A stretch of 64,000 nt of DNA from Octopus bimaculoides (taxonomy: Eukaryota), in NCBI RefSeq assembly GCF_001194135.2, contig NC_068991.1, positions 7,085,615-7,149,614 of the forward strand, given 5' to 3'. Under the pieces are notes generated by a model, which was not told the DNA's origin, searched no databases, and saw only the letters and a list, made by a program, of their open reading frames with translations. Shown piece after piece: positions 35,375 to 53,972 of the stretch (positions are counted from its first letter, which is position 1; the number at the start of each line of letters is the position of its first letter). The position numbers were made by a program, and so were the translations under genes.

Positions 35375-35698
35375 TCACTTGTTTACAGAAGCGAGAACAT
35401 CTGAACTTTGTAATAAGGATATTTTGGTTTTTGGTAGCATGGCTTTTAGTTTGTCATTTAATTGCCTTATGCTTATGTCATTTGACAAGTTGGTCTTGTT
35501 GGAAAAATTTTGATCATCTAATGAGAGAAAAGGAATTAATTCCATGTTACTTTGAGAGACGTTTTCAAATGCATTCATTTCAGTGTCAGTCAAATTTTGT
35601 GTTTCACAGATCTTATTTCGGACAATACCCCATTCCAGAAACTTCAGATTTACAAGTTTTGTCACCAAGGCAAATGTGTTGCTGTTTATCACGGCAGG
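35375..35698 (-). CDS. MBD/F-box gene last exon (final LRR + stop)
   Basis: PAVINSNTFALVTKLVNLKFLEWG...LASVNK*; 324 nt. Confidence 0.85.
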   Translation of the reverse strand, partial: PAVINSNTFALVTKLVNLKFLEWGIVRNKICETQNLTDTEMNAFENVSQSNMELIPFLSLDDQNFSNKTNLSNDISIRQLNDKLKAMLPKTKISLLQSSDVLASVNK

Positions 35699-38600
35699 CT
35701 GACAAAATAAAAAAAATGTAATAAATGAAATGAAAATACAGGCACAGAGAGAAAGAGAGAGAGAGAGACACATACACACACACACACATACAATGAGTGA
35801 TTCAAAAGTCCCTTTAAAATATTAGTTTCAAATTTTGGCACAAGTCCAGAGACAACTTCTTGCCTTCAGTTCCAACAGACCAGCAGAGTCTGACCAACAG
35901 CAGAGCCTTCCAAGCAATCAATGGACTGATTGGCCACAGCTGGACACACTGTGCCATCTTCTCCCATGTGATGTCCTTCGTCATCACTGACAACAACAGA
36001 CAAAATAGTAGTAATAGTAGTAGTAGTATTGTTTTTAGTACAACTCAGCTGAACTGAAAGCTCAAATTTAAATTGCAAATTCCTAAAACTATATCTATTC
36101 CAAGTATACAGTAATGTTTATTCACTTCTTGTACAGGGGTGAGGGGTGGGAGTTTCTGCCTTCCTTTTGCAAGAAATCAATGAACTTCACTGACTAAAGG
36201 AATCTCGGCATCGTTCTGAACCAAGGTTTTTAAATATGTAATGTCCACTGCCAAATAACAAGCACTGACCTATGGTAAATAAATGGAGGTATAACATGCA
36301 GGTGGTGAATCTCCCCTGTTGAGGGGGGAGAGAGAGAGAAACGGAAAGAGAGAGAGGAAACAAATAGAGAGGAGACACAGAGAGAGGATGCAAAGACATA
36401 GAGAGCCCTAATGTTCTCACCTGATGAGTTGTGTCCGGCCAAATCACCAATTTTGAAAGATTAGTCAGTGGACTAAGTTTAGTGTGCAATTTGTCAGATA
36501 TGACAAAGAGCATTAGTTCAAGTTCTCTTAAACTGAAAGAAAACAAAAAGTGATCCAGTTAAGTATTTGAGTCCCTTCAACTAAAACCCACCCACCCACA
36601 AAACTAGGCCTCTTTTTTTTTAAATATTGAATGCAAGTAACCAATGTACTATTTATAAATAACATGGTCCCGCATCACAAGAATCAAAATCACTCATTAA
36701 AAACCTTGTTTTAATGACTGAATACAGTAAAGACACACAATTATAATTCTTCTATCTCCTAATTATGTGTCTGCCTGTAACTAATTTGTTGATATCATGA
36801 TTATATTAAATAATGAGCAATTTTCTTTTTCATTGTATATCAGTTTAAATTCTGGCCTATGTTTAACTAATATCATATCATCATCCACTTTTCTATGCTT
36901 GCATGGGTCTGATGGAATTTGTTGAGGGCAGATTTTCTATGGCCAAATGCCATTCCTATCACCAAACCTCACTTGATTTCAGGCAAGCCAATATTCCAAA
37001 GGGCCAGAAATATATTTCCCACAGAATGCTGGAAACAAACAATATTGCTTGTATGACAATGATGCTCATTTACAAATATCATGTGATGTCAGTACATATA
37101 TACTGGACTGGGTACACATACATACATGAAGGGCTTCTTTCAGTTTCCACGATTAAAAAAAACTAAAAAATTGGTTTTCCCAATCATGTGGAGTTCACTG
37201 AATGGTACCCTTGAGGAAGTGTTTTCTGCTATATCCTCAGAACAACCAAAGCCTTGTGAATGGATTTGGTAGACAGAAACTGAAAGAAGCCCATCATATT
37301 TGTGTGTGTGTGTGTCTGTTCTCTTGTATTGATTTTATGTGATTGTTGTAAAAGCATCATCATCATCATCATATAAGCTATGTTGTCCAGTTCTCCAGTG
37401 AAAAACATGTCCAGTTATAGGGAAATATTACCTTACTTGGAAACAAGTCAGGGTTGGCAACAGGAAGGGCATCCAGCCATAGAAAATATGCTTCAACAAA
37501 TTCTGTTTGATGCGTGCAAGCATAGAAAAGTGGACATTATGATGATGATGATGATAAATATATTTAATATAATTCTGAATGAAGTACAATAAATGCTACT
37601 CACCATTTTAAGTTGCCCAATGCCTTTGCCAAGCTGACATCATTTAAATTACCACCAAGTTCAAGATGAAGTCTTTCAAGATTCACAAGTTTACCTAACT
37701 GGAAATATGTCTATAAAAAAGAAGTGAATAGAATCCATTGAACAGAGGATAAAATTTGATATTTGCAAAAGAGATTTCATCAGTAAAAAAACATCATTGG
37801 TTGAGTGGAGATAAGTTAGATTTTGATATTGACCTCTCAGGTATTTGTGTCCATAGATTTATTAAAAGTTAAAATTTTATTAATGCCACAAGTTCAAACC
37901 CTAACACTGAGATCATCATCTAAGCAAGTACGAGTTGTAAAGTGATTTCAACAACTTGTTAGAAATAGCAGCTAAGTCTCCTTCAAATCACACCTTATCA
38001 TTTATAAACAAAAAAAGGACAAAAGGACATCAAATAGTGTAGGCCTTAAATCACTATGTGTGTGTATATGCATATATATAGATATACTTTATTTAAAAGC
38101 AGCTGCTTTTAAATAAAGCATATTACTCTACCTCTGGTATTTGAGTACTCTTTTTTCCACCTTGTTGCACATTTCATGTGCTNNNNNNNNNNNNNNNNNN
38201 NNNNNNNNNNNNNNNNNNNNNNNNNNNNNNNNNNNNNNNNNNNNNNNNNNNNNNNNNNNNNNNNNNNNNNNNNNNNNNNNNNNNNNNNNNNNNNNNNNNN
38301 NNNNNNNNNNNNNNNNNNNNNNNNNNNNNNNNNNNNNNNNNNNNNNNNNNNNNNNNNNNNNNNNNNNNNNNNNNNNNNNNNNNNNNNNNNNNNNNNNNNN
38401 NNNNNNNNNNNNNNNNNNNNNNNNNNNNNNNNNNNNNNNNNNNNNNNNNNNNNNNNNNNNNNNNNNNNNNNNNNNNNNNNNNNNNNNNNNNNNNNNNNNN
38501 NNNNNNNNNNNNNNNNNNNNNNNNNNNNNNNNNNNNNNNNNNNNNNNNNNNNNNNNNNNNNNNNNNNNNNNNNNNNNNNNNNNNNNNNNNNNNNNNNNNN

Positions 38601-41600
38601 NNNNNNNNNNNNNNNNNNNNNNNNNNNNNNNNNNNNNNNNNNNNNNNNNNNNNNNNNNNNNNNNNNNNNNNNNNNNNNNNNNNNNNNTATAATGTATTGG
38701 TATGTTTATTTTTTTATATATTATTTTTTTAATATATTATTTTCTTCATTTTGTACTTCTTTGTAAAAAACATTTTCATTCTCCCTCTTCTTGAAAATTT
38801 GCTATGCAATGAAAGCCGGTTAGAAATCTTTATTAAAATATGCTTCCAGTTTAGCATTCTGCCTTATTATTATTTTTCATTTTCCTATATATATATATAT
38901 ATATATATAAATCATCATCATTATCATCGTCTAATGTCCGCTTACCATGCTGGCATAGGTTGGACGGTTTGACTGGGGACTAGTGAGCCAGATGGCTGCA
39001 CCAGGCTCCAATCTGATCATATATATATATATATATATATAGATAGATAGATGTTCTCAACTATCAGAAAGAGTGTTAAGAGAAAACATTAAACATTTCA
39101 AAACTGAAATTATCATACAGCTGATGTTGGTGTGTTTACGTTCCCCGGAACTTAGCGGTTCAGCAAAATAGAATAGAATAAGTACTAGGCTTACAAAGAA
39201 TAAGTCCTGAGGTTGATTTGTTCAACTAAAGGTGGTGCTTCAGCATGACCACAGTCAACTGACTGAAACAAGTAAAAGAATAAAGGAATAAAGATACTTT
39301 GGATTAAAGTTTAGGATCGGTTTTGGTAACGCACTACCTACCTCAGATGTCCAGTTGATACATTCCCCCAACTCTAATACTTTCAAGTTACGGAGTTCTC
39401 CTAAGTAATCAAAGTCGTGATCACTGGCTTTCAAAGATGTAATAGACTGTAAAGAAAAAAGAAAAAAAATATATATATAGGCGACTAATGTTTTGCGAGT
39501 TAATATGGTAGACAAAAACTGTCTGTCTATCTATCTTAGTTTGTCTCCTCCACCACTACTGCTCAACAACCGATGTTGGTTTGTTTACATCCTCATAACT
39601 CAGCAGTTAAGCATAAGAGACTGATAGAACAGTACCGGACTTGAAAAAATGAAATGTACTTGCTGGAGTCAATCTGTTCAACTAAAACAAGCCTCAATCT
39701 AAATCCATGAAATATAATAAAAAGTTAATATGAAATAAAAAAAAAAAAAAGAAATTTACTTACAAGATGCCGAAGTTGCTTTAATTTAATCAATTCAAAG
39801 ATCCCAGATGGGAAAGAAGCAACTAAACCTCCCGTGCCACGTAGCTGTAGTTTCTTCAACATTTTTACATTACAAAATTTGGTCAAATCAATCTTGGTTG
39901 GTGTTGTCCTATCAAATGGAATGATACCAGAAGAGATTGCTCAATAGAATTATGTATTAACTAAACGAATAAAAAATTTCAATATATTACTGTTATTAAT
40001 GAATGTCATAATAAAATTCAGATATCAAATTCCTAATCGACTGGTCCCCTCCCCAAAAATTTTGGGCCTTGTGCCTAGAGTAGAAAAGAATATTTTCCCT
40101 TACACTTGCTACACCACAAATATAGCATAGATAGCATCATGTTCTAGAATCCAATTTATTATATTAATCGTTTTTTTTCAAGTAGTTTAATGACCATATT
40201 TGGTTAACAAACATCAGAACTTTGCCTGGAGTCACTCATATATTTCAAGCAGTTAATGATAATAGTTAGTAAAAGCATATAGGCTAGTGATTAGAGATGC
40301 ACTGAAGATCATAAGGTTGTGGTTTCAATTCCTGGCCTGGGCAGTGCATGGTATCCACAAGCAAAATACTTCATTTTGCATTGTTTCAGTTCACACAGAA
40401 GTAAATGAGTCCCAGTATTAACCAGGAAGTTAACCCTGCAACAGACCAGCATCCCCTTCCAGGGGAGTGTTGTAACCTCATACACCATAGAAACCGGGTT
40501 AAGCTCCAGTCTTAAGAGTCCTAGGGATCATGAGAGAATTAAGACCAAGTAACGAGGGTATTGAAGCAGCAGCCCTCATGGATAATGTCTTCCTATCCCA
40601 TATAAGCTTATTAACTAAAAGAGTAACCAGTACTTGTCTAAGTTAATTTGATGATCTCGTTAATTAAGAATAACCAGTGAGGCATCCTATCACCTTCTTC
40701 GGTTAAAATGAACAGGAAAAAAAAGATGTGGATTCAGCTAAAATCATTAATGGAGTAATAGAAATTTCAATTTGTTGTTATGAAATTATTTGTCATGTGT
40801 AGTATTGTTTTGGATAATCATGTGACAATACAAGTAATGCAAAAAGACTGAAAATAGTGAATTAGTGAATTTACAAGAAATAGCACAAAATAACATGTAC
40901 CATTGTTGTTCATTGCTGATATCACTTATTCTTTTAGCAGTCAACTCTTGCAAATTGGGGAGCTTCTCACAGACTGTATACAACATAAGAGCAGGTACTT
41001 GATCAAAGTAGATTCGTTTTAGTGTTGTCAGTTGATCTAGAACAGGAGTTAGTTGGTGCCAAATGCGATTCCAATCATCTCCTAACTTCATTCCTCGTAG
41101 ACTCTACAACAGTAGAACAGAAATTTATAATGCCACTTCACATTTCTAAAAGTAAGACAACGTTCTTAAAAGTAACACAAAACAAAATTTAAAGTATTTT
41201 ATTTTATTAGTTGTAACCCATTCGTTACCATACTTCAGTTGAAATACACAGTCTTGGCTTAAATTAATTTTGAAAATGAAGAATTATTCAAATATATGTC
41301 ATAATTAAACTGGTGTTTCAAACATAAATCAAGAAGAAATTCTGATAGGTTCTAATTTAGATTACTTTAAAACGGAATTTGTATCACAAAAATAGGAGCA
41401 GTTTCTGGTGGGTTAGTCTAAAAAAAGGTTAAATATAAACTACGAGTAAGTTTTGACACTTACTAATTCTTCAACAGTATATTTGTTAAAATATTTTGTA
41501 GCCAAAGTCCAATTAGAAATTCTTGTATTATTCAAATGAATGGCTTTCCACTGAAATAAAAATAACAAGGATCAGCAATGTGAGTATACATGTGAATGAG

Positions 41601-42465
41601 AGCATGCATAGATACACAGAACAAAAATAGCAAATCATGGTAGCCACAAATTTCAAGAGGTCATTAGGACAAAAATCGAAGTGAAGGAAAATATTAGGCA
41701 TTAACAAATTAAGTGATTAATATTATTTCTAGCTTAGGAAACAAAGCATTGTTCCTTCCAATATTACCACCATCATTTTAACGTCCACTTTTACATGTTT
41801 GCCAAAGAGGCATATTTTCTATGGTTGGATAGCCTTGCTGACACCAACCTTCACCTGTTCCCATGCAAGGTGATATTTCCCCATGGCCAGAAATTTTTTC
41901 ACAGGACATTGGAAATAAATGACTCTGCTTGCATGACAGTGGTACTCATTTACAGCTATCATGTAATGTCAAAACAAGAAGGCACAAACACGCTCACTCT
42001 CTCTCACACACACACTGGGCTTCTTTCAGCTTCCATCTTCCAATCACGAAACTTTGGTTGACCCAAAGCTATAGAAGACATTTGCATAAAGAGCCATACA
42101 GTGGGAAAGAACCCAAAACTGTCTGGTTGAGAAGCAAACTTTGAAACTACACAGCCACAACTGTGCCTATCTACATCATCACTATCATCATTTAACATTC
42201 ATTTCCCATGCTTACATGGGTTGAATGGGCTGAGAGCTGCACTAGGCTCCATTGTTTAGTTTGGCATGGTTTATATTCTTTTATCTGCTTCAGTCAATTT
42301 GACTGTGGCCATGCTGGAGTACTGCCTTTAGTCGAACAAACTGACCCCAGGACTTATTCTTAGTATACCTGATACTTATTCTATTGGTCGCCTTTTGTTA
42401 CAGGGACATAAACACACCAACATTAGTTGTCAAATGATGGTGGGGGAACAAATACAGACATACAA

Positions 42466-42498
<33 letters not shown>

Positions 42499-44203
42499 GA
42501 AAGATAGATAGATAGATAGAAAAGGTAAGACAATAAAAGAAAGTGACCTCGATATTATGTAAATAGAGGAATTTATCTGTAAATAATATGTGACAATTAT
42601 TCAGTAGCCATGATAAAACTCCGAGTTTCAGATACCGGCGCGGAAACCCACGCCGCCATCTCTTCAGTTATCTGGCCATTGAAGAATGCTATGAAAATGA
42701 CTGTTAAACAAAGGGACGTCATATATATGACGGACTTCTTTCAGTTTCCGTCTACCAAATCCACTCACAAGGCTTTCATCAGCCTGAGGCTATAGTAGAA
42801 GACACTTGTGCCAGCTTAAATTAGAATATGGTGTATTACTATATAAATATCAACTCCAAATACTAAATTAGTACTTTAATAATTTATTTCAAAATATACA
42901 GTTAAGTATGAATGAATAATTTATTAAACTTACCAGAGAAGGCTGAGTCGCAAGTTGGTGCCATGATTTACATACCAATGAGCATCTGTTGGAAAGAATA
43001 AGGAAGTAAAGGCTATTTAAATCAAGGAAACTAGATCCAATAACATTTACATAACCTTAGAAAAAACATCCATCCGTCCGTCCGTCCGAACATTGTAAAA
43101 TCCAGTGATTCCTTATCGTCTGAACCTTCACAATCTTATCATATAAAAGACTTGCAATCTACTTCAGACATCCCAGATAGCGCCTTCACTATATATATAT
43201 ATATGCAACGGGCTTCTTTCAGTTTCCGTCCACTAAATCCACTCACAAGGCTTTGGTCGGCCTGAGGCTCTAGTAGAAGACACTTGCCCAAGGTACCATG
43301 CAGTGGGACTGAACCCAGAACCATGTGGTTGGTAAGCAAGCTACTTACCACACAGCTACTCCTGCGCATATATTCATTTACAACTATCCTCTGATGTCAA
43401 AGCAAGGAGTTACACACACACACACACACACACACGACAGGCTTCTTTCAGTCACAGGAATATAAATATTTATGACAACTCTTATAAAACCACTCTAAAA
43501 GTGAAGAAAAGATTGCATTTTTTTAATTTGAAATTTTATTTTACATCATTATCATCATCGTTTAACATCCGCCTTCCATGCTAGCATGGGTTGGACGATT
43601 TGACTGAGGACTGGCGAACCAGATGGCTACACCAGGATCCAATCTGATTTGGCAGAGTTTCTACAGCTGGATACCCTTCCTAACGCCAACCACTCCTAGA
43701 GTGTAGTGGGTGCTTTTATGTGCCACTGGCATGAAGGCCAGTCAGACAGTACTGGCAATGGCCACACTCAAAATGGTGTATTTTACGTGCCACCTGCACA
43801 GGAGCCAGTCCAGCGGCACTGGCAACAATCTAGTTTGAATGTTTTTTCACGTGCCAGTAAGGCGATGCTGGTAACGATCACGCTCAAATGGTGCTATTTA
43901 CGTGCCACTGGCAAGGAAGCCAGACAGCTGCTCTGGCAATGATTACGCTCAGACGGTGCTCTTAGCACTGGGATTTTTATGATTTGAACATCCGGCATTT
44001 AGAATCTGGCAATTCATTATACACCAGTTAAGTTGAACAATGCAATAGATATGGTTTATACTATTCAGAATATGGTAATAAAAAAAAAATCAATAACATT
44101 AGTTCTTATGTATCATGTGCATCTACAAATCTTTGTTTCTTTGGAGATTATATGTATGCATATAATATGTAGTTGTGTGTGTGTGTTTGTGTATATATAT
44201 GTA

Positions 44204-44271
<68 letters not shown>

Positions 44272-47200
44272 GATGTGTTTGTTTTTGTGACATATATAAA
44301 AACAATTTCACATTAAACTGAAGAACTACTCAATATTTTTTAGTAGAGAACATGTTTATTAAATTTCTACAAGAAGTGGGTGAATAGTGACTTCGAAGTT
44401 TTGGCTTGTTAGTCTTCTTCACCCCTCTTCTCTCACATACACACAACTGTTTCAATAAAATGTCTCGTGTTTAAAACATTTCAGAATAAATTTATTCAGA
44501 AACTCACCTGACAAGATCTCCTGCACTTAAATAGTGAAATATCTGCAGCATACTAGAGTAGCCAGAATATAATTTTTTGAAAGGACACAGGTAGTTGTTG
44601 AATTTGTTTCTGCATTTTTGAATTTTGCTGATTGTTTTTGCAGATTCCAAGGTTTTACTTTTATCTACAGCTTGATTGCTTTCGCTTCCTTTGTTCTTCT
44701 CCGAGAGAGACACAGAGTAATCTTTGGTACTATCACCAGACACAGTACCCGATGAAAAGGTTATATTCATTGTGGTTGTGGAGCCACTAGGTACAGAAAA
44801 TGTCTTGGGGGGCAGAAAAACCTTTAACCCTTCAGGGGTGTTTATGCAACGAGATGGGGGGATAAAGAGTTGCATGTTATTAATGCGTAATGCAAGAGGA
44901 AGGGAGGAATCTAAACGCTTTGCTACTGCTAATGGTAATGTAAGAAGCTGGCCCGAGCGTGGGTAATTGTCTTTGCCAGCTTCACTATCACTGACATTAC
45001 TAGAACTACTCGGAGATGAAGATGGAACTTCCAGTTTAATGTTGGCTGATGATATATTAGGTTGTGAGTGAGTGGAAGTAAGGGATTTAGGGGATGAAAC
45101 ATTTACAGGACAATCAGATGGTGATGATGATGATGAGGTAGTAACATTCAAGTCTTTTGTGGTTTGAATGAGTGTATTGAGAGAAGCACTTGTAGAGGGA
45201 GTGTTTGTAACTGTGAAAGTGTTGGGTGCTGTAGTTTCAGAAATACTGCTGGTGTCTTTCAACACTGAAGAAGGAACTGGATGAGGTAAAGGTGGTGAAG
45301 AGTGAGACAGAGTCTTTGATGCGTTTAATGAGTTATTAGATTTATTTGATTTCAAACGAGGACTTACGGACGCTTGCAATGTATTGAGTGAAGCTTGGAT
45401 TTGAGACTTGCAATCTGGGATGTCTGAAGTAGATTGCAAGTCTTTTATATGATAAGATTGTGAAGGGTCAGACGATAAGGAATCGCTGGATTTTACAATG
45501 TTCATGACAACATATCTAGGGGATCCATTTGAAGCACTTTTTAACAGTTGAGAATCAGATTTGGATGCTTGAGATAAAAAGTTTGTATCTTTAGAAATCT
45601 GAATCACAGATGGCATGGTAGATTTTCTTCCCTTTTCATTATTCCATGAAGAATGATGTGTCTTGGATGTTCTATTACCAGACAAACTATTAGATGCAGT
45701 GGTCTCAACTGGGGGAATCCAATCACCAAGATCCATTTCACAGTTCTGAAATTAATCAAAATTAGAGGTAATAATTAATCTAATCATCTAACAAAGAGTA
45801 TAATTCAAAGTCAATTTAGTTTTAAGAAACAAAAAACATATTTGTAAATGGAAAGAAGAGAAGATTTGTCTGTCTTGTGTATCGCATGACACACACGACT
45901 TACTTGTCCGGTGTCAATGTATCATATCATACACATTCCCAATTTTAAAAAAAAATACCACAGTAATTTGGGACTTATGAAACGAAAACTTTATATTACT
46001 CAGAAAGTATGAAACACGCATGCACACATGTATATCATGATTCATACACTGTTCACTTGACTTTTGTACATAATTCTATGTACAAAGGGCATCCAGCTGT
46101 AGAAACTCTGCCAAATCAGATTGGAGCCTGGTGTAGCCATCTGGTTCACCAGTCCTCAGTCAAATTGTCCAACCCATGCTAGCATGGCAAGCGGACGTTA
46201 AACGATGATGATGATGTACATGAACCTTTGATGAGCTGTAGTGCACCTGAGCACCAGACACAGTAATTTCATTATTATTATTATTATAAGGATTAACTAA
46301 AAGTCTGAAAACCAGACATTTAGGACAAACTTATGAAAGTGTTTTCGACTGGCAACGGGTTAATAATAAGATTGATATAATTTTAAAAGTGCTTACTTTG
46401 CATTTGAAATTTTGGGGAACATCATCTTCTTTCAGGTTTACACATGAATTATGAAATAGACACATGCATATATCACAATGCAGTTGAGGAGGAATGCCTG
46501 TAAGGCCTGGACAGTTGAGGGAACATGGTTGAAAAGCATTTCTTTTGTTCATATTAACTCTGCAATAAATATAAATTGAAACATTTAACAAATTGTGATT
46601 TACAGTGGTCACAACAGATTGAACATACAATGAAGCAAGCTGCTGAGATTGTTTTTGGTTTAGCCATTTAAGTAGATTTAGAAAAGCACTGAAATCTAAA
46701 TTAATATTTGTGAAAAAAATATCATTCAATGCAAATTATTGAAAACTCTTTGTTTCAATCACTGGGCTGTGGCCATGCTGGAGCACCACTTGGAAAGGTT
46801 TCACTCCAAGAAATCAACCCCACACTTATTTTTGAGTTTGGTACTTATTCTATTCTATTGGCCAATTTTGCTGAACTATTTAAATTACGGGAATGTAAAC
46901 AAACCAACACTGGTTGCCAAGTGGTAGGGGGAGAGACAGACAGACAAAGGCACATACATATATATATATATGATGGGCTTTTACAGTTTCCAACTACTGA
47001 ATTTACTCACAAGGTATGTGCTGGCATGGGGCTATAGTAGAAGACACTTGCCCAAGGTGATGTGCAGTGGGACTAAACCCAGAATCATGTGGTTACAAAG
47101 CAAGCATCTTAACCACACAGTCATGCCTGCACCTTTACATGAATTCTAAACTACAAATAGAGAAAGAATTTAAGAGTTGTGAAGAAATTGTTGGAAAAAC

Positions 47201-50200
47201 TACAGGAAATAAATAAAAATACTTACAACATTGATTTAGAAATTAGAGTTGTACTTTTCCGAGCAACAGATTTTATTCGCTTTGGAGTTACCTCACTGGA
47301 ATTACTATTCTCCGCTTGACGTTTTGCAGGACTTGATTTGGATTTCAATTTGGAGAATTTGTTGTTTGTTTTACCACCTGACAGTGACAATTTCTTGTAC
47401 GGAGGACGTTCTATAAGCTGCACATCTGAATCGTCTTCAATAGTCATGGAATCATTACTTCCATAAGATTCTTTTCGAATTTTCTTACTAGTTTTCTTAT
47501 CAAATAAAAATTCACCGTCTGGGTTTCTGTGCCGGACTCCGTGGCTGCCAGCAGTACGCACCATCTCAAACGGCGGTTTATAAATAGATCGGCGGAGAAA
47601 GTTGAAGTTTTCAACTGTCAAGTTAGTGTCTTTTCCTTCTACTGAAAAATAAAAAGATAAATCAGCTAAATAGAAAAAACAAAACAAAAAAAAACAATAA
47701 AGAAACACAAAAATAAACTATATGAAATATTCATTATAACAAACTTTACAAAGTGTCCATTAATATATACTTCACAAATGACTAGAAACCCATAAGTCTA
47801 TTCCTTGGTAGGAATTTGTATCCTATGAAACTAATTAATAGATTCATGTTGAAAGCAATGAAGACAAGGAGAAAGAATCTTAATTAGAAAGAGACAATGA
47901 CTTGCATATTTATTTCAAAATAGTATTCTGGATAATATATTCAAAATGGATATACTGAAGAAAGTCACATAACTGCAGCATTTGTCTCGAGAAAGCTTCC
48001 CAAATAGACAAATAATGCTAAAAAATACAGAGGAATACCAGTAGTAGACAAAAATCATCCAGCAATGGAATTGCTAAATCCAATTTTCATCTGCTACTGA
48101 TATTCTTCTATGTATTTTAGCACTATACGTCTATACAAGATGCTTTCTTAAGATGAATAAAAAAGAACTTAAATGGTACTTACAGTAATTAACAATTTGT
48201 ACCATTGATCGCTAAAAAAAATATAAAAAAATGTTTAAAACAATTATTTAGAATATATTAAATATACAACTATATGCACACACACACACACACACATACA
48301 AAAATAACTCATTCACAGAAAACAAGCATGTTTGCTCACTCAATATCACTCAACACACAAACAGCGTTCTCTTTAACACATTATCACTGGCAATGAAAAA
48401 CGGTGCCTTTAAGTCAATATGAAGCAGCGAAAAGAATGGCTCAGCCCTGACAAACAAGCGACTCTGTGAGCAAAACAAGACCATCATCCTTGAAAGACCA
48501 TGTTGTGTGTATGGTGGGACTGGGAAGGCATAATTCTTTACGAACTGCTTGAGCACAACCCAAACACTCAATGTGGAGCTCTACGTTCAACATCAATGAA
48601 GCATTTCAGCAAAAAAAGACTGAATAGGTGAAATGGCATTCATCTGCAACACGACAATGCCTCTCCTCACATCGCCAATATAACCAAAGCCACGATTCAA
48701 AAACTTGAATGGGAAGTGCTGCCTCATCCTCCATACTCAAAATTGTCAGATTTTCATCTCTTTTGACCACATTTGAATGCTTTGTGCAGTGTATTGTTCA
48801 ATAATGATGTGGAATTAAGGGCTTGGTTGGACGAATGCTTTGAGTCAAGACCAGATTTCTATTGTCAGGGCATTGTAAAACTTATTGAACAATGGGAGGA
48901 AATCGTAAACAACAATGGAGAGTATATTACTGATTAATCTGTTGCAGTTTTTTTGTTTAAAATAAATTTCAAAAACATGCTCATGAATTATTCCTCAACC
49001 CAATATGAATGTGTGTGTGTGTGTCCTTGTGTCTGTGTTTGTTCCCTAACCATTGCTTGACAACCATTTATGTCCCTGTAACTTAGCAGTTCGGCAAAAG
49101 AAACCGATAGAATAAGTACCAGGCTTACAAAGAATAAGTCCTGGGGTCGATTTCTTCAACTAAAAGGCCGTTTAAGGCAGTGCTTCAGCATGGCCACAGT
49201 CAAATGACTGAAGTAAAAGATTAAAAGAAAAAACACCAATTACTATTACTGACAAATTGGTGATAAAACATAGGAAAGAGATGAACTAATAAATTCATTA
49301 CCAGTTTCTTGTTATCGGGAGTATAATAGTAAATATCTGCTGGTGCTGTCTTTGGTTTGCCTGACTTGGTGAATTCTTTATACACTGAACGAATAACAAC
49401 TTCTCTTCTCCAGCCTAGGAGGAAAAAAAAAATCAGAAAAATAAGGAAACTGTGAATTCACACATGACAGAAAAATCATTTGTAAAAGGGCGTGGCCCAG
49501 TCAGTAAGGGGTTACACTCACAATCATAGGATCGCGGTTTCGATTCCTGGACCTGGCAGTGCATTGTGTTTTAAGAGCAAAACACTTCATTTCATGTTGC
49601 TTCAACTCATTCAGCTGTAAATGAGTAACCCTGCGATGGTCTGGCATCCCATCCAGGGGGATGATGTGATCTCGATCACTTATACACCACAAGAACCTGG
49701 TCACCAGCCCCTAAGAGTCCTAGGACTCAAGACAATGTCAGGAGGAGGAGGAGGGGCTGTTGTTGATGATGATGATGATCATGATGAAAAATCATTCAAA
49801 CTCCTACAATTAGCATATAATTCTTTCTTTAGTCACCTCCAACAGTTATAGAAAGAAAAGGACAGATTGGGTGGCATGGTCCTGGTTGGATTGTGCCTGA
49901 ACAAAAGGACTAGAGAGTTATGGCTAGAATGCTTTTAATGATGGAACTAAACAAGTCATGTATAGAATGGTACAATATACAAATCTATAGAATAAACATG
50001 TCAAAATTTTACCTTGTTCAAAAGGTGCATATATTTTCTCTGCGTCAGCTTCTTTATATTTCTTTGAAGCTAAAATACAAAAAAGTAAATAAATAAATAT
50101 TATGATAGGAGCAGGAGTGGCTGTGTGGTAAGAAGCTTGCTTCCCAACCACATGGTTCTGGGTCAAATCACCAATTTGGTGGGTCATAAATTTAATCAGC

Positions 50201-53200
50201 AAAGCAACCATTAATACTGGTTTGAAATTTTGGCAGAAGGCCAGCAATTTCGGGGGAGGGAGTAAATCAAATACATTGACCCCAGTACTCAACTGGTACT
50301 TATTTTGTTGACCCTGAAAGGATAAAAGGCAAAGCTGACCTTGGTGGAATTCAAACTCAGAATGTAAAGACAGACAAAATGCTGCTAAGCATTTTGCCCT
50401 GCAAGTTAATGATTCTGCCAGCTTGACCATCTCCTTAACCCTTTCGTTACTGTATTTATTTTGAGATGCTGTGTGTTTCAATTAATTTTAAATATAACAA
50501 AAAATTCAGTAAAATAACTTAGTCATCATTAAGCTGGTGTTAGGAACACAAATTGTGACTAAGGTTTGGTGGAAAATTTTAATTCAAAACTTATGAAAAC
50601 AAAACATTTGTATTCAGAGCCAGAGCTGGATTCAGCTGGGTTGATAACGAAAGGGTTAATATCACCTCACATTAAAAAAAATATATTCTTACCTGTGGGT
50701 GACGTTTGCACAAATGATGCTGAAATGTTTGATGCCAGCATTAATGTTTCTTCGTTACCAATATCTTCAGAAGAATCTGCATTTGAAATTCGTTTACTCA
50801 ATGTTTTAGCTGGTTTGTTTTGTATGTCTACATCTGGACCTAAACCAATGAGATCAAGAACATTGAACTTAACTTTTGGTTGTCTTTGAGATCGCCTTGG
50901 TTCAGCCAAAGTATAATTGACAGCACCAATGGGAGAATTCCAGTTAGTTTGTGCTACACTGGAGGACTCTTGTTTATCATCAGTATTACTATTTTTACTT
51001 TCAACACTTGTGGTTTTATTATCAGATTCCTCGCTTGGTAAGGGCGAAGAAGTGTCGGTGATTGCGGTAATGTTTTCAGCAGTTAATTCTCGCTTGATTT
51101 GTCCATGTTCTTCATTATTTTCAACTGGGCGACTTGTTTCCATATCAACTTCCATCATACACTCATCAGTCTTCTCTGCTGGTTCTGATGTCCCATCATT
51201 AACCACATTTACTGAAGAACCATCAGAAGTTTCAACTTTTATGTTTTCTTTTATTAAAATAATCTGTGACTGAACCATATCGTTATCATCATCGTTTGTT
51301 TGTTGATCTAGATTTGTCATTGTAGAACTGCAAGTGTTACTTTCTGTATTATTTGGATGTGTTTTCGCAGTTGTTTTCTGATCAACAGAATTACTTGAGC
51401 TAACAGCATTCACTGGGCTATTTACATTATCTACAGAGAAGTGTTTATCCGTATTCTGATCATTCCCATCATTTTGGTCACTGGTAGAAATTCCTTGGTT
51501 TTTATCAGATTCAAGCAAACTATTCGAAGCACTCGCACTGACTGTTGTATTTTGAACTGCTTCATAACGCTTGTCAGACGCAGATGAGTTCTGGCAGTCA
51601 ACATCAGGAGATGCATTGCCAGCATCAGTACTGCTACTCAACAACAAATTATTTTTAGATTCATTATTAATTTTTCTGGGTTCAATATTATTGTTTAATT
51701 CAGCAGGTGAATGACGAATGTGTTGAGAAGTGACATTTTCTTCAGCATGGGTAACATTAGTATCCAAACATGCTGCTTCAGAAGTTGAAGGAAATGAGTC
51801 TTGAGCGTTATTTGGTGTAAGCTCAAGTGCAGATTTGTTAGAATCAAGTTTAGGATTAGAAAGACCAACACCTAAATCATTGTCTATTGAAGCCATTTTA
51901 TCATAAGCTGCTGGGGTGGATTGACCAGTAGATGATGACAAAGAGACCGTTGCAGTTGATGCAGTGGTGTCTTCCTCACATATTGAACTTTCTTCAATTA
52001 TCTTGCTTCCAGATGAAGAAGATACATTTCCAGCAGAAACTGTTGTTATTGTAGCATTAGATGTCTTCTCATCTCTTGATGTTGAAGTCTCATTGCAACC
52101 GGATGGGAAAAGTGAGTTGGTTTCATGAGTTATTACAAATGGTTGTCCAGATGCAGATGTAACATTTTCATTCAATAAGGAAGTGACTTTAGAGTCTGGT
52201 TCTGATGCTTTTCCTACACCTGAAGATGACTCTGCCATTTTAATTGGCGTTGATATTACTGTTTCACTTGTTGCAGGTACAGTAGCAGTATCCTGAGAAA
52301 TAGATTCTACGTTGGTGGTAGATGGTGAATTTACATGAGCAGTAAAAGAAAACGAGAGAGTGTTATCCCCAGCTAAAGCAGTGTCCTTCTCTCCTGACGT
52401 AGACCCAACCATGGCTCTTTCTACTGACAATGTTCTGTTACTGTCTGATGTCAAATCATGTGACTGAGCTGGGGCAACATTTGATTTGGATAACATGGCA
52501 TCTTTATTACAAGACAAAATTGAATTACTAGATTCAAGAATGGTGTCTTTTCTTTCGGAAATAGATTTACTATCACTGGGGCATAAATTATCATGAGATG
52601 TTCCTCCAGAACTGCTTGTACTATAGACTGAGCTGCTTGTTGGTATCACTGTAGATTCTTTGCTGCTCAGCTCTGCAATGAGTTCATTATGAGTAGATGC
52701 AGAAGTAGTGTGCAAAGAGTCTGAATTTGAAGATTCTTTGAAAAAACTGCTTTCGATAGCTGCATCACTTTGTTCTGGCTTCAGGTTATTGAAGTTGGAC
52801 ATTACAGAACTACTGGATACAGAAGGTATCTCTAGAGATTCTGGATTAATGGTTAAACTTGTAAGATTCTGTCTTGCATTATTATTATTAGTATGGTTAT
52901 TTGATACGTATACACTGGATGGAGAAAGAGTAGTAGCGGGGAAGGTTGAAACAGAAGTAGCTTGAAAGGGTTTGGAGGATGAACTGGATAAATCCTTATG
53001 CTGCTGTAAAGTATTTTGTGAATTAACACCATTTCCATCTGAAGGAATGGTCGATACAGGACTCTTTAGTTTATTCGTGCCATTATCTGAAGCTGGATTA
53101 ATTGAACTCAATATGGGAGGTTGAGCCACTGGATGAACCTGAGGGGGACAGTAAGCACTAGAAGTAGGAACAGCTTCAGAAGTCCTTTGAATTATCAAAT

Positions 53201-53972
53201 TACTATTACCAGCAATTAAGACGTCATCTGCAGATGCTGTTACAACTGGTGTTTGAGTTATGTATGGAGACATTTCAGTAGGGTTGTTATCTGGTTGTAA
53301 TGCAACTGAAGATTGTTGTAGGGAACTATTAGAACTCAGATGAGTACTAACAAGAGGAGTTGGAGGAAGCAATAAATCAGAGTGTCTTTCTAGGTTTCCT
53401 GATAACACTGGCTCAGAGTTTAAACACTGTTGATTGTTAGATATAGATACTGAACTGCTGACAGTATTAACTGAACTCAGGGGACTGCTCGCTGTACTAG
53501 CAGATACAACAGTTTGGCTGTTACTTAAATTACTAGAAGGATAATTCAATGGTCTTGAACTACCAGAAACAAGATTTAAATCTTGTACTGTTGAGTCTGC
53601 TAGATTATTAGGATTAAGAGATAAAACTGGCTTATTAGGGAGATGACATCGAACATTGGTTTGATGAGAATAATTAGAATCTCTTGGATGACTTGGCTCA
53701 GCAGTAATTTTCCTGGTGCTTTCATCATTGTTTTCCAACTGGTGACTAGGAGACTGATGCAGAAAGTGGTCAGCAGCATTTGCTAACAAATGCATGTTGC
53801 AGTCAGTAACCTGATTACCTGACGATCGCGTATCAGACGGGATTATCTTGCTAGTTTGATCCATTGATTCCTTTTGTTCAAATTCTAATTCATTTCTACT
53901 GCCTCCAGAATCACAATGGTCAAGATTATCCAAAGGTTTGCTATTATTTTTGGAAGTTGTATCTTCTTCCAT
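35375..53972 (-). CDS. MBD-PHD-F-box-LRR protein (14 coding exons, about 2123 aa)
   Basis: Exons join in phase to 6372 nt with GT-AG sites. Recognisable MBD (GWRREVVIR..ADIYYYTPDNKKLRSM..NFNF), C4HC3 PHD, F-box (MLQIFHYLSAGDLVRCSLVCKSWHQLATQPSLW) and about 9 LxxLxxLxL repeats. Start codon inferred as the first ATG in the giant exon. Confidence 0.88.
36421..36532 (-). CDS. MBD/F-box gene exon 13 (LRR)
   Basis: (C)LRELELMLFVISDKLHTKLSPLTNLSKLVIWPDTTHQ; 112 nt. Confidence 0.88.
37604..37710 (-). CDS. MBD/F-box gene exon 12 (LRR)
   Basis: TYFQLGKLVNLERLHLELGGNLNDVSLAKALGNLK; 107 nt. Confidence 0.88.
39342..39446 (-). CDS. MBD/F-box gene exon 11 (LRR)
   Basis: SITSLKASDHDFDYLGELRNLKVLELGECINWTSE; 105 nt. 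Confidence 0.88.
39764..39908 (-). CDS. MBD/F-box gene exon 10 (LRR)
   Basis: (W)TTPTKIDLTKFCNVKMLKKLQLRGTGGLVASFPSGIFELIKLKQLRHL; 145 nt. Confidence 0.88.
40901..41103 (-). CDS. MBD/F-box gene exon 9 (LRR)
   Basis: SLRGMKLGDDWNRIWHQLTPVLDQLTTLKRIYFD...LPNLQELTAK...; 203 nt. Confidence 0.88.
41464..41550 (-). CDS. MBD/F-box gene exon 8
   Basis: WKAIHLNNTRISNWTLATKYFNKYTVEEL; 87 nt; supplies the W closing the F-box. Confidence 0.88.
42934..42985 (-). CDS. MBD/F-box gene exon 7 (F-box C-half)
   Basis: (R)CSLVCKSWHQLATQPSL; 52 nt. Confidence 0.9.
43545..43968 (-). mobile_element. SINE family B copy
   Basis: Near-identical to 905-1313. Confidence 0.8.
44508..45745 (-). CDS. MBD/F-box gene exon 6 (PHD end, Ser-rich linker, F-box N-half)
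   Basis: NCEMDLGDW...MLQIFHYLSAGDLV(R); 1238 nt; matches the 410-aa ORF. Confidence 0.9.
46085..46216 (+). mobile_element. SINE family B 3' fragment, inverted relative to the 43545 copy
   Basis: About 7 mismatches over about 125 nt to the reverse complement of 43551-43678. Confidence 0.8.
46397..46559 (-). CDS. MBD/F-box gene exon 5 (PHD finger)
   Basis: ...CSLNCPGLTGIPPQLHCDICMCLFHNSCVNLKEDDVPQNFKCK; 163 nt. Confidence 0.9.
47227..47641 (-). CDS. MBD/F-box gene exon 4 (MBD end + basic linker)
   Basis: (L)EGKDTNLTVENFNFLRRSIY...KSTTLISKSM; 415 nt. Confidence 0.88.
48184..48211 (-). CDS. MBD/F-box gene exon 3 (28-nt microexon in MBD)
   Basis: RSMVQIVNY(L); TAG acceptor after poly-T, GTAAGT donor; needed for phase. 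Confidence 0.85.
48345..49005 (+). mobile_element. Decayed Tc1/mariner transposase 3' half with right end
   Basis: IITGNEK, KTMLCVWWDWEGII, QHDNASPH, EVLPHPPYS..SDFHLF, ...NNNGEYITD*; frameshifted; intronic and antisense to the MBD/F-box gene. Confidence 0.87.
49302..49414 (-). CDS. MBD/F-box gene exon 2 (MBD core)
   Basis: (G)WRREVVIRSVYKEFTKSGKPKTAPADIYYYTPDNKKL; 113 nt. Confidence 0.9.
50435..50659. mobile_element. piggyBac-like MITE
   Basis: Perfect ends TTAA-CCCTTTCGTTA ... TAACGAAAGGG-TTAA. Confidence 0.8.
50693..53972 (-). CDS. MBD/F-box gene giant first coding exon (1093 codons, S/T/N-rich low complexity)
   Basis: Stop-free 1125-aa ORF; acceptor TTTCAG at 53994-53999, ATG at 53972, donor GTAAGA after 50693. 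Confidence 0.88.

What the first reader, a model, noticed from the sequence alone, without database searches (positions are those of the whole stretch)
35375..53972. MBD-PHD-F-box-LRR protein: a candidate methyl-CpG-reading SCF ubiquitin-ligase adaptor
Seen: 14 phase-consistent exons give an about 2123-aa protein with, in order, a roughly 1090-aa disordered N-terminus, an MBD, a C4HC3 PHD, a Ser-rich linker, an F-box and about 9 LRRs. Established: FBXL19 and the C-terminal half of KDM2A/B have the order CXXC-PHD-F-box-LRR; CXXC binds unmethylated CpG and the F-box binds SKP1. Vertebrate MBD proteins (MeCP2, MBD1-6, BAZ2, SETDB) have no F-box. Inference: this is the mirror-image module, possibly bringing SKP1/CUL1 or a PRC1-like complex to methylated DNA, which in molluscs is mainly gene bodies. 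I recall MBD+F-box proteins appearing as an uncharacterised invertebrate group in MBD phylogenies but cannot verify this, so the family may be catalogued; I know of no functional characterisation.
Basis: partly seen in the sequence, partly recalled or inferred. Interest (0 to 1): 0.85.

Follow-up and report, generated by a model that had tools for sequence, protein, structure and literature searches.

The report
Octopus MBD-Fbox chromatin ubiquitin-ligase adaptor gene
This is a real octopus gene of the named but untested protostome "MBD-Fbox" family, joining a DNA-methylation-reader-like domain to a ubiquitin-ligase adaptor; whether it reads methylated DNA is still open.

Summary
Pfam scores above threshold: MBD 49 bits, F-box-like 55, LRR_14 41. 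The C4HC3 PHD pattern is present and conserved but scores below the Pfam cut-off.

The N gap lies inside an intron. Three mollusc orthologues, an intron-free transcript contig and the Octopus sinensis RefSeq protein all read straight across that junction.

One correction: the O. sinensis/vulgaris orthologue (91% identical, misnamed "serine-rich adhesin for platelets") shows a missed 57-nt exon at 50069-50013. It encodes the start of the MBD, giving 15 exons and 2142 aa.

The family is already catalogued as "MBD-Fbox" (de Mendoza et al. 2019), and I found no functional study. Named members come only from protostomes: molluscs, brachiopod, annelid, nemertean, chelicerates, myriapod, crustacean and insects.

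The KDM2/FBXL19 "mirror image" is an analogy of layout, not close kinship. The F-box/LRR part is generic FBXL, and the PHD is nearest PHF2/8/13.

The MBD is nearest the BAZ2 TAM domain, which ignores methylation, yet it keeps every canonical mCpG-contact residue. Methyl-reading is therefore plausible but unproven.

The parts
50693..53972 (-). Coding exon 1 (aa 1-1093 plus 1 nt). Ser/Asn/Thr-rich N-terminal region with no recognisable domain. ATG at 53972; an acceptor-like site lies about 25 nt upstream.
   Evidence: 1130-codon open frame, P about 1e-35. 87% identical to O. sinensis/vulgaris exon 1. No Pfam hit. GT donor.
50013..50069 (-). Coding exon 2 (57 nt, 'ASKKYKEADAEKIYAPFEQ'), the N-terminal part of the MBD. 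Because 57 = 3 x 19, skipping it keeps the frame.
   Evidence: Present in O. vulgaris CAI9730641.1 and O. sinensis XP_029642448.1. AG/GT, phase 1 to 1. Supplies the family consensus 'PFxxGW'.
49302..49414 (-). Coding exon 3, MBD strands b1-b2: 'GWRREVVIR...ADIYYYTPDNKKL'. Arg finger 1 at 49391-49389; Asp at 49337-49335; Tyr at 49331-49329.
   Evidence: Pfam MBD. Alignment to MBD2. Invariant R, D and Y in the family. Coordinates.
48184..48211 (-). Coding exon 4, a 28-nt micro-exon 'RSMVQIVNY'. It carries Arg finger 2 plus Ser (48211-48206) and the start of helix a1.
   Evidence: Found by a splice and frame scan. Identical in the octopus orthologue. Completes the Pfam MBD match, 18.9 to 47.7 bits.
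47227..47641 (-). Coding exon 5: the end of the MBD ('LTVENFNF'), the family-specific extra strand 'PPFEMVRTAG' (down to 47547), then a basic linker (22% K+R).
   Evidence: E, R and A are invariant. The equivalent residues form a C-terminal strand in the AlphaFold model of the Solemya orthologue.
46397..46559 (-). Coding exon 6: PHD-type zinc finger, first seven ligands (CSLNC...C..C....H..C...C), starting at 46525.
   Evidence: Pfam PHD 17.5 bits, below the cut-off.
44508..45745 (-). Coding exon 7. Contains: the last PHD Cys ('CKNC' spans the exon 6/7 junction), the Ser-rich linker (45739-44954), the mollusc-conserved motif 'QLLTLP..PLALRINN..EGLKVFLPPKTF' (44953-44792), and the first half of the F-box from 44560.
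   Evidence: 415-codon open frame, P about 1e-13. tblastn with mollusc orthologues. Motif present in 9 mollusc members. F-box Pfam hit.
42934..42985 (-). Coding exon 8: F-box helix H3, 'RCSLVCKSWHQLATQPSL'.
   Evidence: Pfam F-box-like hit on this piece alone, 24 bits..
41464..41550 (-). Coding exon 9: 'WKAIHLNNTRISNW...', the end of the F-box (down to 41533) and the first LRR.
   Evidence: Found by tblastn with Patella P0002. AG/GT. 97% identical in O. vulgaris.
40901..41103 (-). Coding exon 10: LRR.
39764..39908 (-). Coding exon 11: LRR.
39342..39446 (-). Coding exon 12: LRR. This is the last exon before the intron that holds the N gap (38183-38687).
37604..37710 (-). Coding exon 13: LRR, 'TYFQLGKLVNLERLHLE..'. 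This is the first exon after the gap intron.
   Evidence: Acceptor fixed by the orthologue alignment. The junction is identical in a transcript contig and in the RefSeq orthologue.
36421..36532 (-). Coding exon 14: LRR.
35375..35698 (-). Coding exon 15: the last LRRs, a variable loop and the C-terminal cap. Stop codon TGA at 35377-35375.
59060..59140 (-). Possible alternative upstream coding exon ('MEHHSYYKYFKQNFAFVDLRKEFSSIE'). It would splice to the acceptor just upstream of the 53972 ATG. Low confidence; it lies next to assembly gaps.
   Evidence: 89% identical to the extra 40-aa N-terminus of O. vulgaris CAI9730640.1.
43088..43181 (-). Intronic reverse-complement copy (91/94 nt) of part of exon 7 (45410-45503). 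It is a recent species-specific inverted micro-duplication and is not part of the protein.
   Evidence: Absent from the syntenic O. sinensis locus.

Best explanation
The locus encodes the octopus orthologue of the protostome MBD-Fbox family. I read it as a chromatin-tethered substrate receptor of an SCF (SKP1-CUL1-F-box) ubiquitin ligase.

Shown here:
- One 15-exon gene encodes a 2142-aa protein. In order it has a long low-complexity N-terminus, an MBD with a TAM-like extra strand, a basic linker, a PHD-type zinc finger, a Ser-rich linker, and an FBXL-type F-box plus a roughly 12-13-strand LRR solenoid.
- This layout is conserved across protostome phyla.

Inferred:
- The MBD and its basic flank hold the protein on double-stranded DNA. 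The family keeps every canonical 5mC-G contact residue: both Arg fingers, Asp, Tyr and Ser. BAZ2A, BAZ2B and MBD3 have each lost some of these. I therefore favour a preference for methylated CpG, which in octopus means the bodies of broadly expressed genes.
- The PHD adds a histone-tail contact. It is probably not H3K4me3, because the cage Trp is Leu.
- The F-box docks SKP1-CUL1-RBX1.
- The concave LRR face selects a chromatin protein, which is then ubiquitinated near the bound DNA.
For: Gene model: all splice sites are canonical and in phase. The model is collinear with O. sinensis XP_029642448.1 at 91% identity.

Domains pass the Pfam cut-offs.

Family size: 68 representatives at E<=1e-30. 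Of the 67 members in which both motifs were found, 28 of the first 42 tested also have a PHD, always in the order MBD, PHD, F-box.

The MBD contact residues R, D, Y, R and S are invariant from molluscs to Lepidoptera. In contrast:
- The BAZ2B TAM has Glu, Ala and Gln at the Asp, Tyr and Ser positions.
- BAZ2A has Lys at both finger positions.
- R-to-K changes cut MBD2 binding to mCG 8- to 30-fold.

The F-box/LRR profile and the predicted fold match SKP1-bound receptors: SKP2, FBXL2, FBXL17, D3/MAX2 and COI1.

Every named member comes from a lineage that, to my knowledge, retains DNA methylation. There were no Diptera or nematodes among about 40 named hits.

Octopus 5mC is concentrated in gene bodies.
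Against: - The closest solved relative of the MBD, by profile and by predicted fold, is the BAZ2 TAM domain. TAM binds the DNA or RNA backbone regardless of methylation.
- In BAZ2A, restoring the arginines does not restore mCG reading, because extra strands join the sheet and re-orient finger 1. The MBD-Fbox model also has an extra conserved C-terminal strand.
- The published MBD tree puts MBD-Fbox with BAZ2 and SETDB, outside the methyl-binding clades.
- Loop L1 carries a variable insertion of up to 7-8 residues.
- The F-box lacks the N-terminal Leu-Pro, having G-[YF] instead. All Pfam matches start at profile position 6-12, mostly 7-9.
- No binding, expression or substrate data exist.
- The phyletic pattern comes from a small named sample.
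Confidence: 0.4

Rival explanations
1. Same SCF-adaptor architecture, but the MBD works like a TAM domain. It grips the backbone of double-stranded DNA, or structured RNA, without regard to methylation. Targeting would then come from the PHD, the basic or AT-hook linker, or partner proteins.
For: - The best solved match by profile is the BAZ2B TAM (E 9.5e-12). The best by fold are the BAZ2B and BAZ2A TAM domains (TM 0.64, rmsd 1.2 A).
- An extra C-terminal strand is predicted.
- TAM is methylation-blind, and K-to-R back-mutation does not rescue mCG reading.
- The published tree places the family with BAZ2 and SETDB.
- GRP AT-hook motifs follow the MBD in Solemya, Patella, Batillaria, a crab and some Lepidoptera, as in BAZ2.
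Against: - Invariance of R, D, Y, R and S over the whole family is hard to explain if no base is read. BAZ2A and BAZ2B have lost several of these residues.
- Only one extra strand is predicted, against two in BAZ2A.
- The octopus protein has no GRP hook.
Confidence: 0.3
2. A non-degradative scaffold. As described for KDM2B in PRC1.1 (from my own knowledge), the F-box-LRR region would bind SKP1 and a partner complex and bring it to DNA. CUL1-dependent ubiquitination would not be the main output.
For: - The layout parallels KDM2/FBXL19.
- KDM2B aligns over the whole F-box-LRR (E 6e-11).
- The KDM2B-SKP1-PCGF1-BCORL1 structure 5jh5 is among the fold hits.
- The F-box is non-canonical, without Leu-Pro.
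Against: - KDM2A and KDM2B are not closer than the bona fide SCF receptors SKP2, FBXL2 and FBXL17.
- Nothing in the sequence points to a PCGF or BCOR-type partner.
Confidence: 0.15
3. The MBD is a protein-protein interaction module, as reported for MBD5/6 and as in the solved SETDB2 MBD-C11orf46 complex. In that case the protein is not tethered to DNA through the MBD at all.
For: - MBDs outside the MBD1-4/MeCP2 clades often bind proteins (introduction).
- The SETDB2 MBD complex 8hfp is among the fold hits.
- MBD5 and MBD6 appear among the profile hits.
Against: - Those matches are much weaker than the matches to BAZ2 and MBD2/3/4.
- The DNA-contact residues are invariant.
- A basic linker or AT-hooks flank the domain.
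Confidence: 0.1
4. Gene-model artefact: the MBD exons and the F-box exons belong to two neighbouring genes, or the assembly gap hides a break.
For: There is no RNA evidence from this species. One N gap lies inside the span.
Against: - The O. sinensis RefSeq and O. vulgaris models are collinear over all 15 exons.
- A single 1749-aa ORF with all four domains sits on a 6.7-kb intron-free contig from another species.
- The same layout occurs in eight phylum- or subphylum-level groups.
- The junction across the gap is confirmed three ways.
Confidence: 0.02

Closest known systems
MBD-Fbox family (named in de Mendoza et al. 2019, Genome Res 29:1277, PMC6673714)
   Same: An MBD and an F-box in one polypeptide. 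The Strigamia maritima member (UniRef T1JCQ3 = P0164) is among the hits to the Patella orthologue at 2e-69. The window protein is the octopus orthologue.
   Different: Nothing differs in kind. The paper only names the family and places its MBD in a tree. The PHD, the LRR solenoid, the TAM-like fold, the invariant contact residues and the pan-protostome spread are described here.
BAZ2A/BAZ2B TAM domain (PDB 7win, 7mwl, 7fhj, 5agq)
   Same: It is the closest solved relative of the MBD by family profile (E 9.5e-12) and by predicted fold (TM 0.64, rmsd 1.2 A, 30% identity). It shares 'GWxRE..iR' and 'P.GKKLR..EV..YL', has a C-terminal strand beyond the canonical MBD, and is followed by AT-hooks in several family members.
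   Different: BAZ2A has Lys at both Arg-finger positions. BAZ2B has Glu, Ala and Gln at the Asp, Tyr and Ser positions. MBD-Fbox keeps all five. BAZ2 proteins carry DDT, PHD and bromodomain modules and join ISWI remodellers; they are not F-box proteins.
KDM2A / KDM2B / FBXL19 (CXXC-PHD-F-box-LRR)
   Same: The order of module types is the same: CpG-related DNA-binding domain, PHD, F-box, LRR. KDM2B aligns across the F-box-LRR.
   Different: There is no CXXC and no JmjC. The F-box-LRR is no closer to KDM2 than to FBXL2 or SKP2. The PHD is nearest PHF2/8/13/23. This is a likely convergent layout, not a sister family.
Canonical methyl-CpG-binding MBDs (MBD2, MBD3, MBD4, MeCP2, MBD1)
   Same: The Pfam MBD match is well above threshold. 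Both Arg fingers and the Asp, Tyr and Ser are aligned and conserved.
   Different: There is an extra N-terminal helical turn and a C-terminal strand, a longer L1 loop, and an outgroup position in the published tree.
UHRF1 (SRA-PHD-RING). The comparison rests on my own knowledge.
   Same: It is the one well-studied protein that couples a methyl-DNA reader and a PHD to ubiquitin-ligase activity. It shows the mechanism is workable.
   Different: It uses a different reader fold (SRA, hemimethylated DNA) and a RING rather than an SCF adaptor. There is no homology.

Membership tests
MBD-Fbox family (de Mendoza et al. 2019) | MBD and F-box in the same protein | tested here: met
   Pfam MBD 49.2 bits and F-box-like 55.1 bits on one 15-exon model. 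The model is collinear with the RefSeq orthologue.
MBD-Fbox family (de Mendoza et al. 2019) | Sequence kinship with the species in which the family was described (Strigamia) | tested here: met
   The Strigamia maritima T1JCQ3 protein (P0164) is in the same HMMER hit set (E 2e-69 to Patella; 36% identity to the window protein over aa 1722-2072).
Canonical methyl-CpG-binding MBD (MBD1/2/4, MeCP2) | Pfam PF01429 above the gathering score | tested here: met
   49.2 bits against a cut-off of 21.
Canonical methyl-CpG-binding MBD (MBD1/2/4, MeCP2) | Two Arg fingers plus Asp, Tyr and Ser (MBD2 R166/R188; MBD1 R22, Y34, R44, S45) | tested here: met
   R1121, D1139, Y1141, R1151 and S1152 in the window protein. 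R, D, Y, R and S are invariant in the 9- and 14-sequence family alignments; R, Y and R also in the 24-sequence one.
Canonical methyl-CpG-binding MBD (MBD1/2/4, MeCP2) | Compact three-strand-plus-helix fold without extra strands joining the sheet | tested here: inconclusive
   The AlphaFold model of the Solemya orthologue (pLDDT 87) has an extra C-terminal strand. It superposes best on the BAZ2 TAM. This is a model of an orthologue, not of the window protein.
Canonical methyl-CpG-binding MBD (MBD1/2/4, MeCP2) | Preferential binding to symmetrically methylated CpG | not testable with these tools
   Needs EMSA or ITC.
TAM domain (BAZ2A/B) | Closest overall sequence and fold similarity | tested here: met
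   Profile E 9.5e-12 to 7win. Foldseek E 8e-7, TM 0.64.
TAM domain (BAZ2A/B) | Loss of base-contact residues (Lys fingers in BAZ2A; Glu, Ala and Gln in BAZ2B) | tested here: not met
   All five residues are retained.
TAM domain (BAZ2A/B) | AT-hooks directly after the domain | tested here: not met
   The window protein has no GRP motif. Such motifs are present in some other family members.
PHD finger | C4HC3 ligand pattern with PHD spacing | tested here: met
   C1310...C1354. The pattern is conserved in all seven PHD-bearing rows of the family alignment. phmmer E 1.6e-4 to the PHF2 PHD.
PHD finger | Pfam PF00628 above the gathering score | tested here: not met
   17.5 bits against a cut-off of 24.
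PHD finger | Aromatic-cage Trp before the His (H3K4me3 readers) | tested here: not met
   'CLFH' aligns to PHF2 'DWFH', so the Trp is Leu. The role of this Trp is from my own knowledge.
F-box / SCF substrate receptor | Pfam F-box-like and F-box above the gathering score; three-helix fold | tested here: met
   55.1 and 37.5 bits. Three helices precede the solenoid in the model of P0027.
F-box / SCF substrate receptor | N-terminal Leu-Pro motif | tested here: not met
   The family has G-[YF] there. All Pfam matches begin at profile position 6-12, mostly 7-9.
F-box / SCF substrate receptor | Binding to SKP1 | not testable with these tools
   Needs co-IP or a complex prediction.
FBXL class | LRR solenoid directly after the F-box | tested here: met
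   LRR_14 41.3 bits against a cut-off of 40. Profile hits to FBXL2, SKP2 and FBXL17. Foldseek top hits are SKP1-bound FBXL-type receptors.
KDM2/FBXL19 subfamily | zf-CXXC next to the PHD | tested here: not met
   No CXXC hit in the window protein or in the full-length O. sinensis orthologue.
KDM2/FBXL19 subfamily | F-box-LRR and PHD specifically closest to KDM2/FBXL19 | tested here: not met

The most novel reading that the evidence does not exclude
MBD-Fbox is a dedicated protostome reader of gene-body CpG methylation. It brings an SCF ubiquitin ligase to methylated, constitutively transcribed genes. This would give invertebrate gene-body methylation a direct biochemical output that vertebrates lack or have replaced.
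Probability: 0.2. Interest if true: 0.85.

Novelty: new member of a known kind. Interest (0 to 1): 0.55.

Why it matters
What gene-body methylation does in invertebrates, and which protein reads it besides MBD2/3, is an old open question.

This family is conserved across molluscs, brachiopods, annelids, nemerteans and all major arthropod groups. It keeps every methyl-CpG contact residue and is wired to a ubiquitin-ligase adaptor. That makes it a concrete candidate that can be tested with ordinary biochemistry and with bisulfite maps that already exist for octopus.

The work also has practical value:
- It corrects a misleading RefSeq name ('serine-rich adhesin for platelets').
- It adds a missed MBD exon.
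- It shows that the MBD sits between the TAM and canonical types, so the family is a natural experiment on what makes an MBD methyl-specific.

Tried and rejected
1. A candidate exon at about 36310-36265 ('GRFTTCMLYLHLFTI') has good splice signals. I rejected it because it forces the last exon into a frame with no LRR character, and it is absent from all orthologues.

2. A mini-exon 'VCPKCL' at about 46330 looked like a source for the last PHD Cys pair. I rejected it because the phase does not fit. The 'CKNC' formed across the junction of exons 46559-46397 and 45745-44508 fits, and it matches the orthologues.

3. An exact look-up of the 2123-aa model found nothing. This was explained later by the missed exon and the species difference.

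4. The first protein search, which included the Ser-rich linker, was flooded by low-complexity candidates. The profile searches returned LRR noise and unnamed fragments. The full HMMER scan of representatives, followed by cluster look-ups, gave the useful taxonomy.

I used the Solemya orthologue, which shares the long L1 loop, and P0027 for the F-box-LRR.

6. I tested the idea that the 94-nt exon/intron inverted repeat is a conserved ADAR editing-site complementary sequence. I rejected it as a conserved feature, because the intron copy is absent from the syntenic O. sinensis locus. It is also closer to its own exon (97%) than the two species' exons are to each other (90%).

7. I tested and rejected specific kinship of the PHD-F-box-LRR half with KDM2/FBXL19.

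8. No tRNA or Rfam family is present in the window.

9. Other ORFs of 110 aa or more in the window gave no Pfam hit, apart from a sub-threshold FHA match.

Full report
**The observation.** The gene lies on the minus strand of the window (36% G+C, CpG observed/expected 0.37, eight N gaps).

I listed the stop-free segments and read the splice junctions. This gave 13 exons with AG/GT borders and consistent phases. One is a 28-nt micro-exon (48211-48184, 'RSMVQIVNY'), found by a frame and splice scan of the intron. That exon raises the Pfam MBD match from 18.9 to 47.7 bits.

tblastn with mollusc homologues made two changes:
- It added exon 41550-41464.
- It moved one acceptor to 37710.

The two largest exons are open for 1130 and 415 codons, where a stop is expected every 15 codons (P about 1e-35 and 1e-13).

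**The gap.** The N run at 38183-38687 sits in the intron between exons 39446-39342 and 37710-37604. Four lines of evidence show no coding sequence is hidden there:
- Three mollusc proteins align without a break across '..NWTSE|TYFQLGKL..'.
- Four intron-free Logan contigs from a relative (P0027, 58-61% identical) carry the identical 'NWTSETYFQLGKLVNL'.
- The Octopus sinensis RefSeq protein has the same junction.
- The syntenic O. sinensis interval is the same length (839 against 846 nt), and no exon is called in it.

**A missed exon and the identity of the gene.** A full HMMER scan of 1.84 billion representatives with the Patella orthologue found 68 relatives at E<=1e-30 and 240 at E<=1e-10.

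One of them, P0147, is 89% identical to the 14-exon model over its whole length. Cluster look-up identifies it as O. vulgaris CAI9730641.1 and O. sinensis XP_029642448.1. It is named 'serine-rich adhesin for platelets isoform X1', evidently because of the Ser-rich low-complexity regions.

The only junction-level difference was 19 residues before 'GWRRE'. These are encoded in the window at 50069-50013, with AG/GT borders and phase 1 to 1. They supply the 'PFxxGW' that all family members have.

The supported model is therefore 15 exons and 2142 aa. It is 91% identical to the O. sinensis protein, with only small indels inside two low-complexity exons.

The O. sinensis locus is collinear at about 90% nucleotide identity, introns included. 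The window therefore comes from another Octopus species. O. bimaculoides is my guess, not a result.

An O. vulgaris isoform has 40 further N-terminal residues.

**Domains.** Pfam on the final model gives:
- MBD 49.2 bits (cut-off 21)
- F-box-like 55.1 (24.3)
- F-box 37.5 (20.5)
- LRR_14 41.3 (40)
- PHD 17.5 (24)

Nothing else is found, and in particular no CXXC or JmjC. The same holds for the full-length O. sinensis protein.

The PHD has a complete C4HC3 pattern, conserved in all seven PHD-bearing rows of the family alignment. It matches the PHD fingers of PHF2, PHF23, PHF13, PHF8 and PHF20 (best E 1.6e-4). The Trp of their 'WFH' is Leu here. Some lepidopteran isoforms lack the PHD.

**The family.** De Mendoza et al. 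[quoted passage not shown] Its MBD branches with BAZ2 and SETDB, outside the MBD1/2/3 and MBD4/MeCP2 clades. No other paper in the searched library uses the term. Reviews of mollusc, annelid and insect methylation toolkits found by my searches do not mention it.

Named members seen here:
- Mollusca: Octopus, Lottia, Patella, Batillaria, Babylonia, Nucella, Solemya, Ylistrum, Sinanodonta
- Brachiopoda: Lingula
- Annelida: Owenia
- Nemertea: Tubulanus
- Chelicerata: Limulus, Tachypleus, Centruroides, Argiope, Brevipalpus, Nymphon
- Myriapoda: Strigamia
- Crustacea: Chionoecetes
- Insects: many Lepidoptera, and Nezara

All are annotated as uncharacterised or misnamed. No deuterostome, cnidarian, dipteran or nematode appeared. 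The named sample is only a few dozen, so absence is not shown.

A 6.7-kb intron-free contig from an unidentified species carries MBD, PHD, F-box and LRR in one 1749-aa ORF.

**What kind of MBD.**

*Evidence for a canonical, base-reading domain.*
- With the single sequence, the best solved matches are MBD2 and MBD3 (E 3e-5).
- The alignment shows that the residues which read 5mC-G in canonical MBDs are all present: R1121, D1139, Y1141, R1151 and S1152.
- R, D, Y, R and S are invariant in the 9- and 14-sequence family alignments; R, Y and R are also invariant in the 24-sequence one.

*Evidence for a TAM-like domain.*
- With the family profile, the top solved hit becomes the BAZ2B TAM domain (E 9.5e-12), just ahead of MBD2 (2e-10).
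- An AlphaFold model of the Solemya orthologue's domain has pLDDT 87.
- That model superposes best on the BAZ2B and BAZ2A TAM structures (E 8e-7, TM 0.64, rmsd 1.2 A). MBD4, MeCP2, SETDB2 and MBD2 follow.
- The model has an extra C-terminal strand, made by the family-invariant 'E..R.A' motif ('PPFEMVRTAG' in the window).

*Why this matters.* Chen et al. 2021 showed that the BAZ2A TAM binds the dsDNA or dsRNA backbone independently of methylation. Its finger positions are Lys. Changing them to Arg does not restore mCG reading, because the BAZ-specific strands join the sheet and re-orient finger 1. The BAZ2B TAM is also methylation-blind.

*What still separates MBD-Fbox from TAM.* BAZ2B has Glu, Ala and Gln where MBD-Fbox keeps Asp, Tyr and Ser. 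R-to-K changes in MBD2 cost 8- to 30-fold in affinity.

MBD-Fbox is thus TAM-like in scaffold and canonical in its contact residues. I put a methyl-CpG preference at roughly even odds and nucleic-acid binding of some kind much higher. GRP AT-hook motifs follow the domain in several members, as in BAZ2, but the octopus linker is merely basic (22% K+R).

**The ubiquitin-ligase half.**
- The family F-box-LRR profile hits FBXL2 (1e-13), SKP2 (1e-12), KDM2B (6e-11), FBXL17 (2e-8) and KDM2A (9e-8).
- The AlphaFold model of P0027 (pLDDT 78, pTM 0.77) shows three F-box helices, then a solenoid of about 12-13 strands with one disordered insert.
- Foldseek returns SKP1-bound receptors first (SKP2, D3/MAX2, FBXL2, FBXL17, COI1). 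KDM2A ranks 23rd and KDM2B 50th.

This is a generic FBXL-class receptor. The KDM2/FBXL19 parallel is one of layout. One caveat: the family has G-[YF] where canonical F-boxes have Leu-Pro, and all Pfam matches start at profile position 6-12, mostly 7-9. SKP1 binding is likely but not shown.

**Mechanism and verdict.** I commit to a chromatin-tethered SCF substrate receptor:
- The MBD and basic flank sit on DNA, probably favouring methylated CpG. In octopus that means the bodies of broadly expressed genes (Macchi et al. 2022).
- The PHD contacts a histone tail.
- The F-box binds SKP1-CUL1.
- The LRR face binds the substrate.

Only the architecture and its conservation are shown. Every binding step is inferred.

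The main rival is the same protein with a methylation-blind, TAM-like DNA or RNA grip. Lesser rivals are a non-degradative scaffold and an MBD used for protein contacts. The artefact reading is effectively excluded.

The finding is a correct and careful observation of a member of an already named but functionally untouched family. That puts it at moderate rather than high interest.

Noticed in passing
window 45410-45503 (coding exon) and 43088-43181 (next intron): 94 nt of the Ser-rich coding exon have a 97% reverse-complement copy 2.2 kb downstream in the following intron. The borders are sharp and there is no other copy in the window. In pre-mRNA this would form a near-perfect duplex of about 94 bp, an ADAR-substrate-like layout. 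The copy is absent from the syntenic O. sinensis locus, so it is a recent species-specific inverted micro-duplication or an assembly artefact, not a conserved editing element.
   Followed up: yes
O. sinensis XP_029642448.1 / O. vulgaris CAI9730641.1 (P0288, P0147): The public orthologues are named 'serine-rich adhesin for platelets'. The name was evidently transferred from a bacterial protein because of low-complexity Ser-rich sequence. It hides the MBD-PHD-F-box-LRR nature of the protein.
   Followed up: yes
L006 25708-26495 (O. sinensis locus): In O. sinensis, a 99-nt unit holding the acceptor and the first 36 nt of the F-box exon (the window's exon 42985-42934) is tandemly repeated 7.9 times at 98% identity. 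The window has a single copy. This could create competing acceptors, or it could be an assembly artefact.
   Followed up: partly
window 44792-44953 (aa 1617-1670): A strongly conserved motif without a Pfam match, 'QLLTLPxAVxKRLxxxxPLAL(K/R)INNxQxxVPPSxxxxxxEGLKVxLPPxTF', lies 80-190 aa before the F-box. A strict pattern finds it only in the nine mollusc members tested. Lepidoptera have a looser 'LAVLNGRRFIVV'. Its function is unknown.
   Followed up: partly
window 59060-59140 (-): A likely alternative upstream coding exon of the same gene, 89% identical to the N-terminus of an O. vulgaris isoform. It is flanked by assembly gaps at 58465-58989 and 59384-59511.
   Followed up: partly
P0289 (O. 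sinensis isoform X2); P0007-P0010 (Lepidoptera isoforms): Annotated isoforms drop functional parts. O. sinensis X2 lacks the last 142 aa, which are C-terminal LRRs. Several lepidopteran isoforms lack the PHD. The family may therefore be regulated by alternative splicing.
   Followed up: no
window 35000-54500, introns (e.g. 43547-43678 / 46085-46216; 39566-39626 / 49049-49109 / 54353-54413): The introns are full of short interspersed repeats in both orientations and of (TA)n and (GATA)n microsatellites. The same repeats recur many times in the O. sinensis locus.
   Followed up: no
window 1767-2102 (-): A 111-aa ORF has a sub-threshold FHA-domain match (18.8 bits against a cut-off of 20.7). It may be an exon of a neighbouring gene.
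   Followed up: no
whole window: CpG observed/expected is low everywhere: 0.37 overall, 0.39 in the coding sequence and 0.32 in the introns of this gene. I did not interpret this further.
   Followed up: no
P0225 / P0307 (Biomphalaria glabrata, 2250 aa) and P0171 / P0301 (Argiope, about 2800 aa): Some relatives are much longer, and my simple patterns found an MBD motif but no F-box motif in them. One Argiope cluster member is annotated as a THAP-domain protein. Variant architectures of the family may exist.
   Followed up: no
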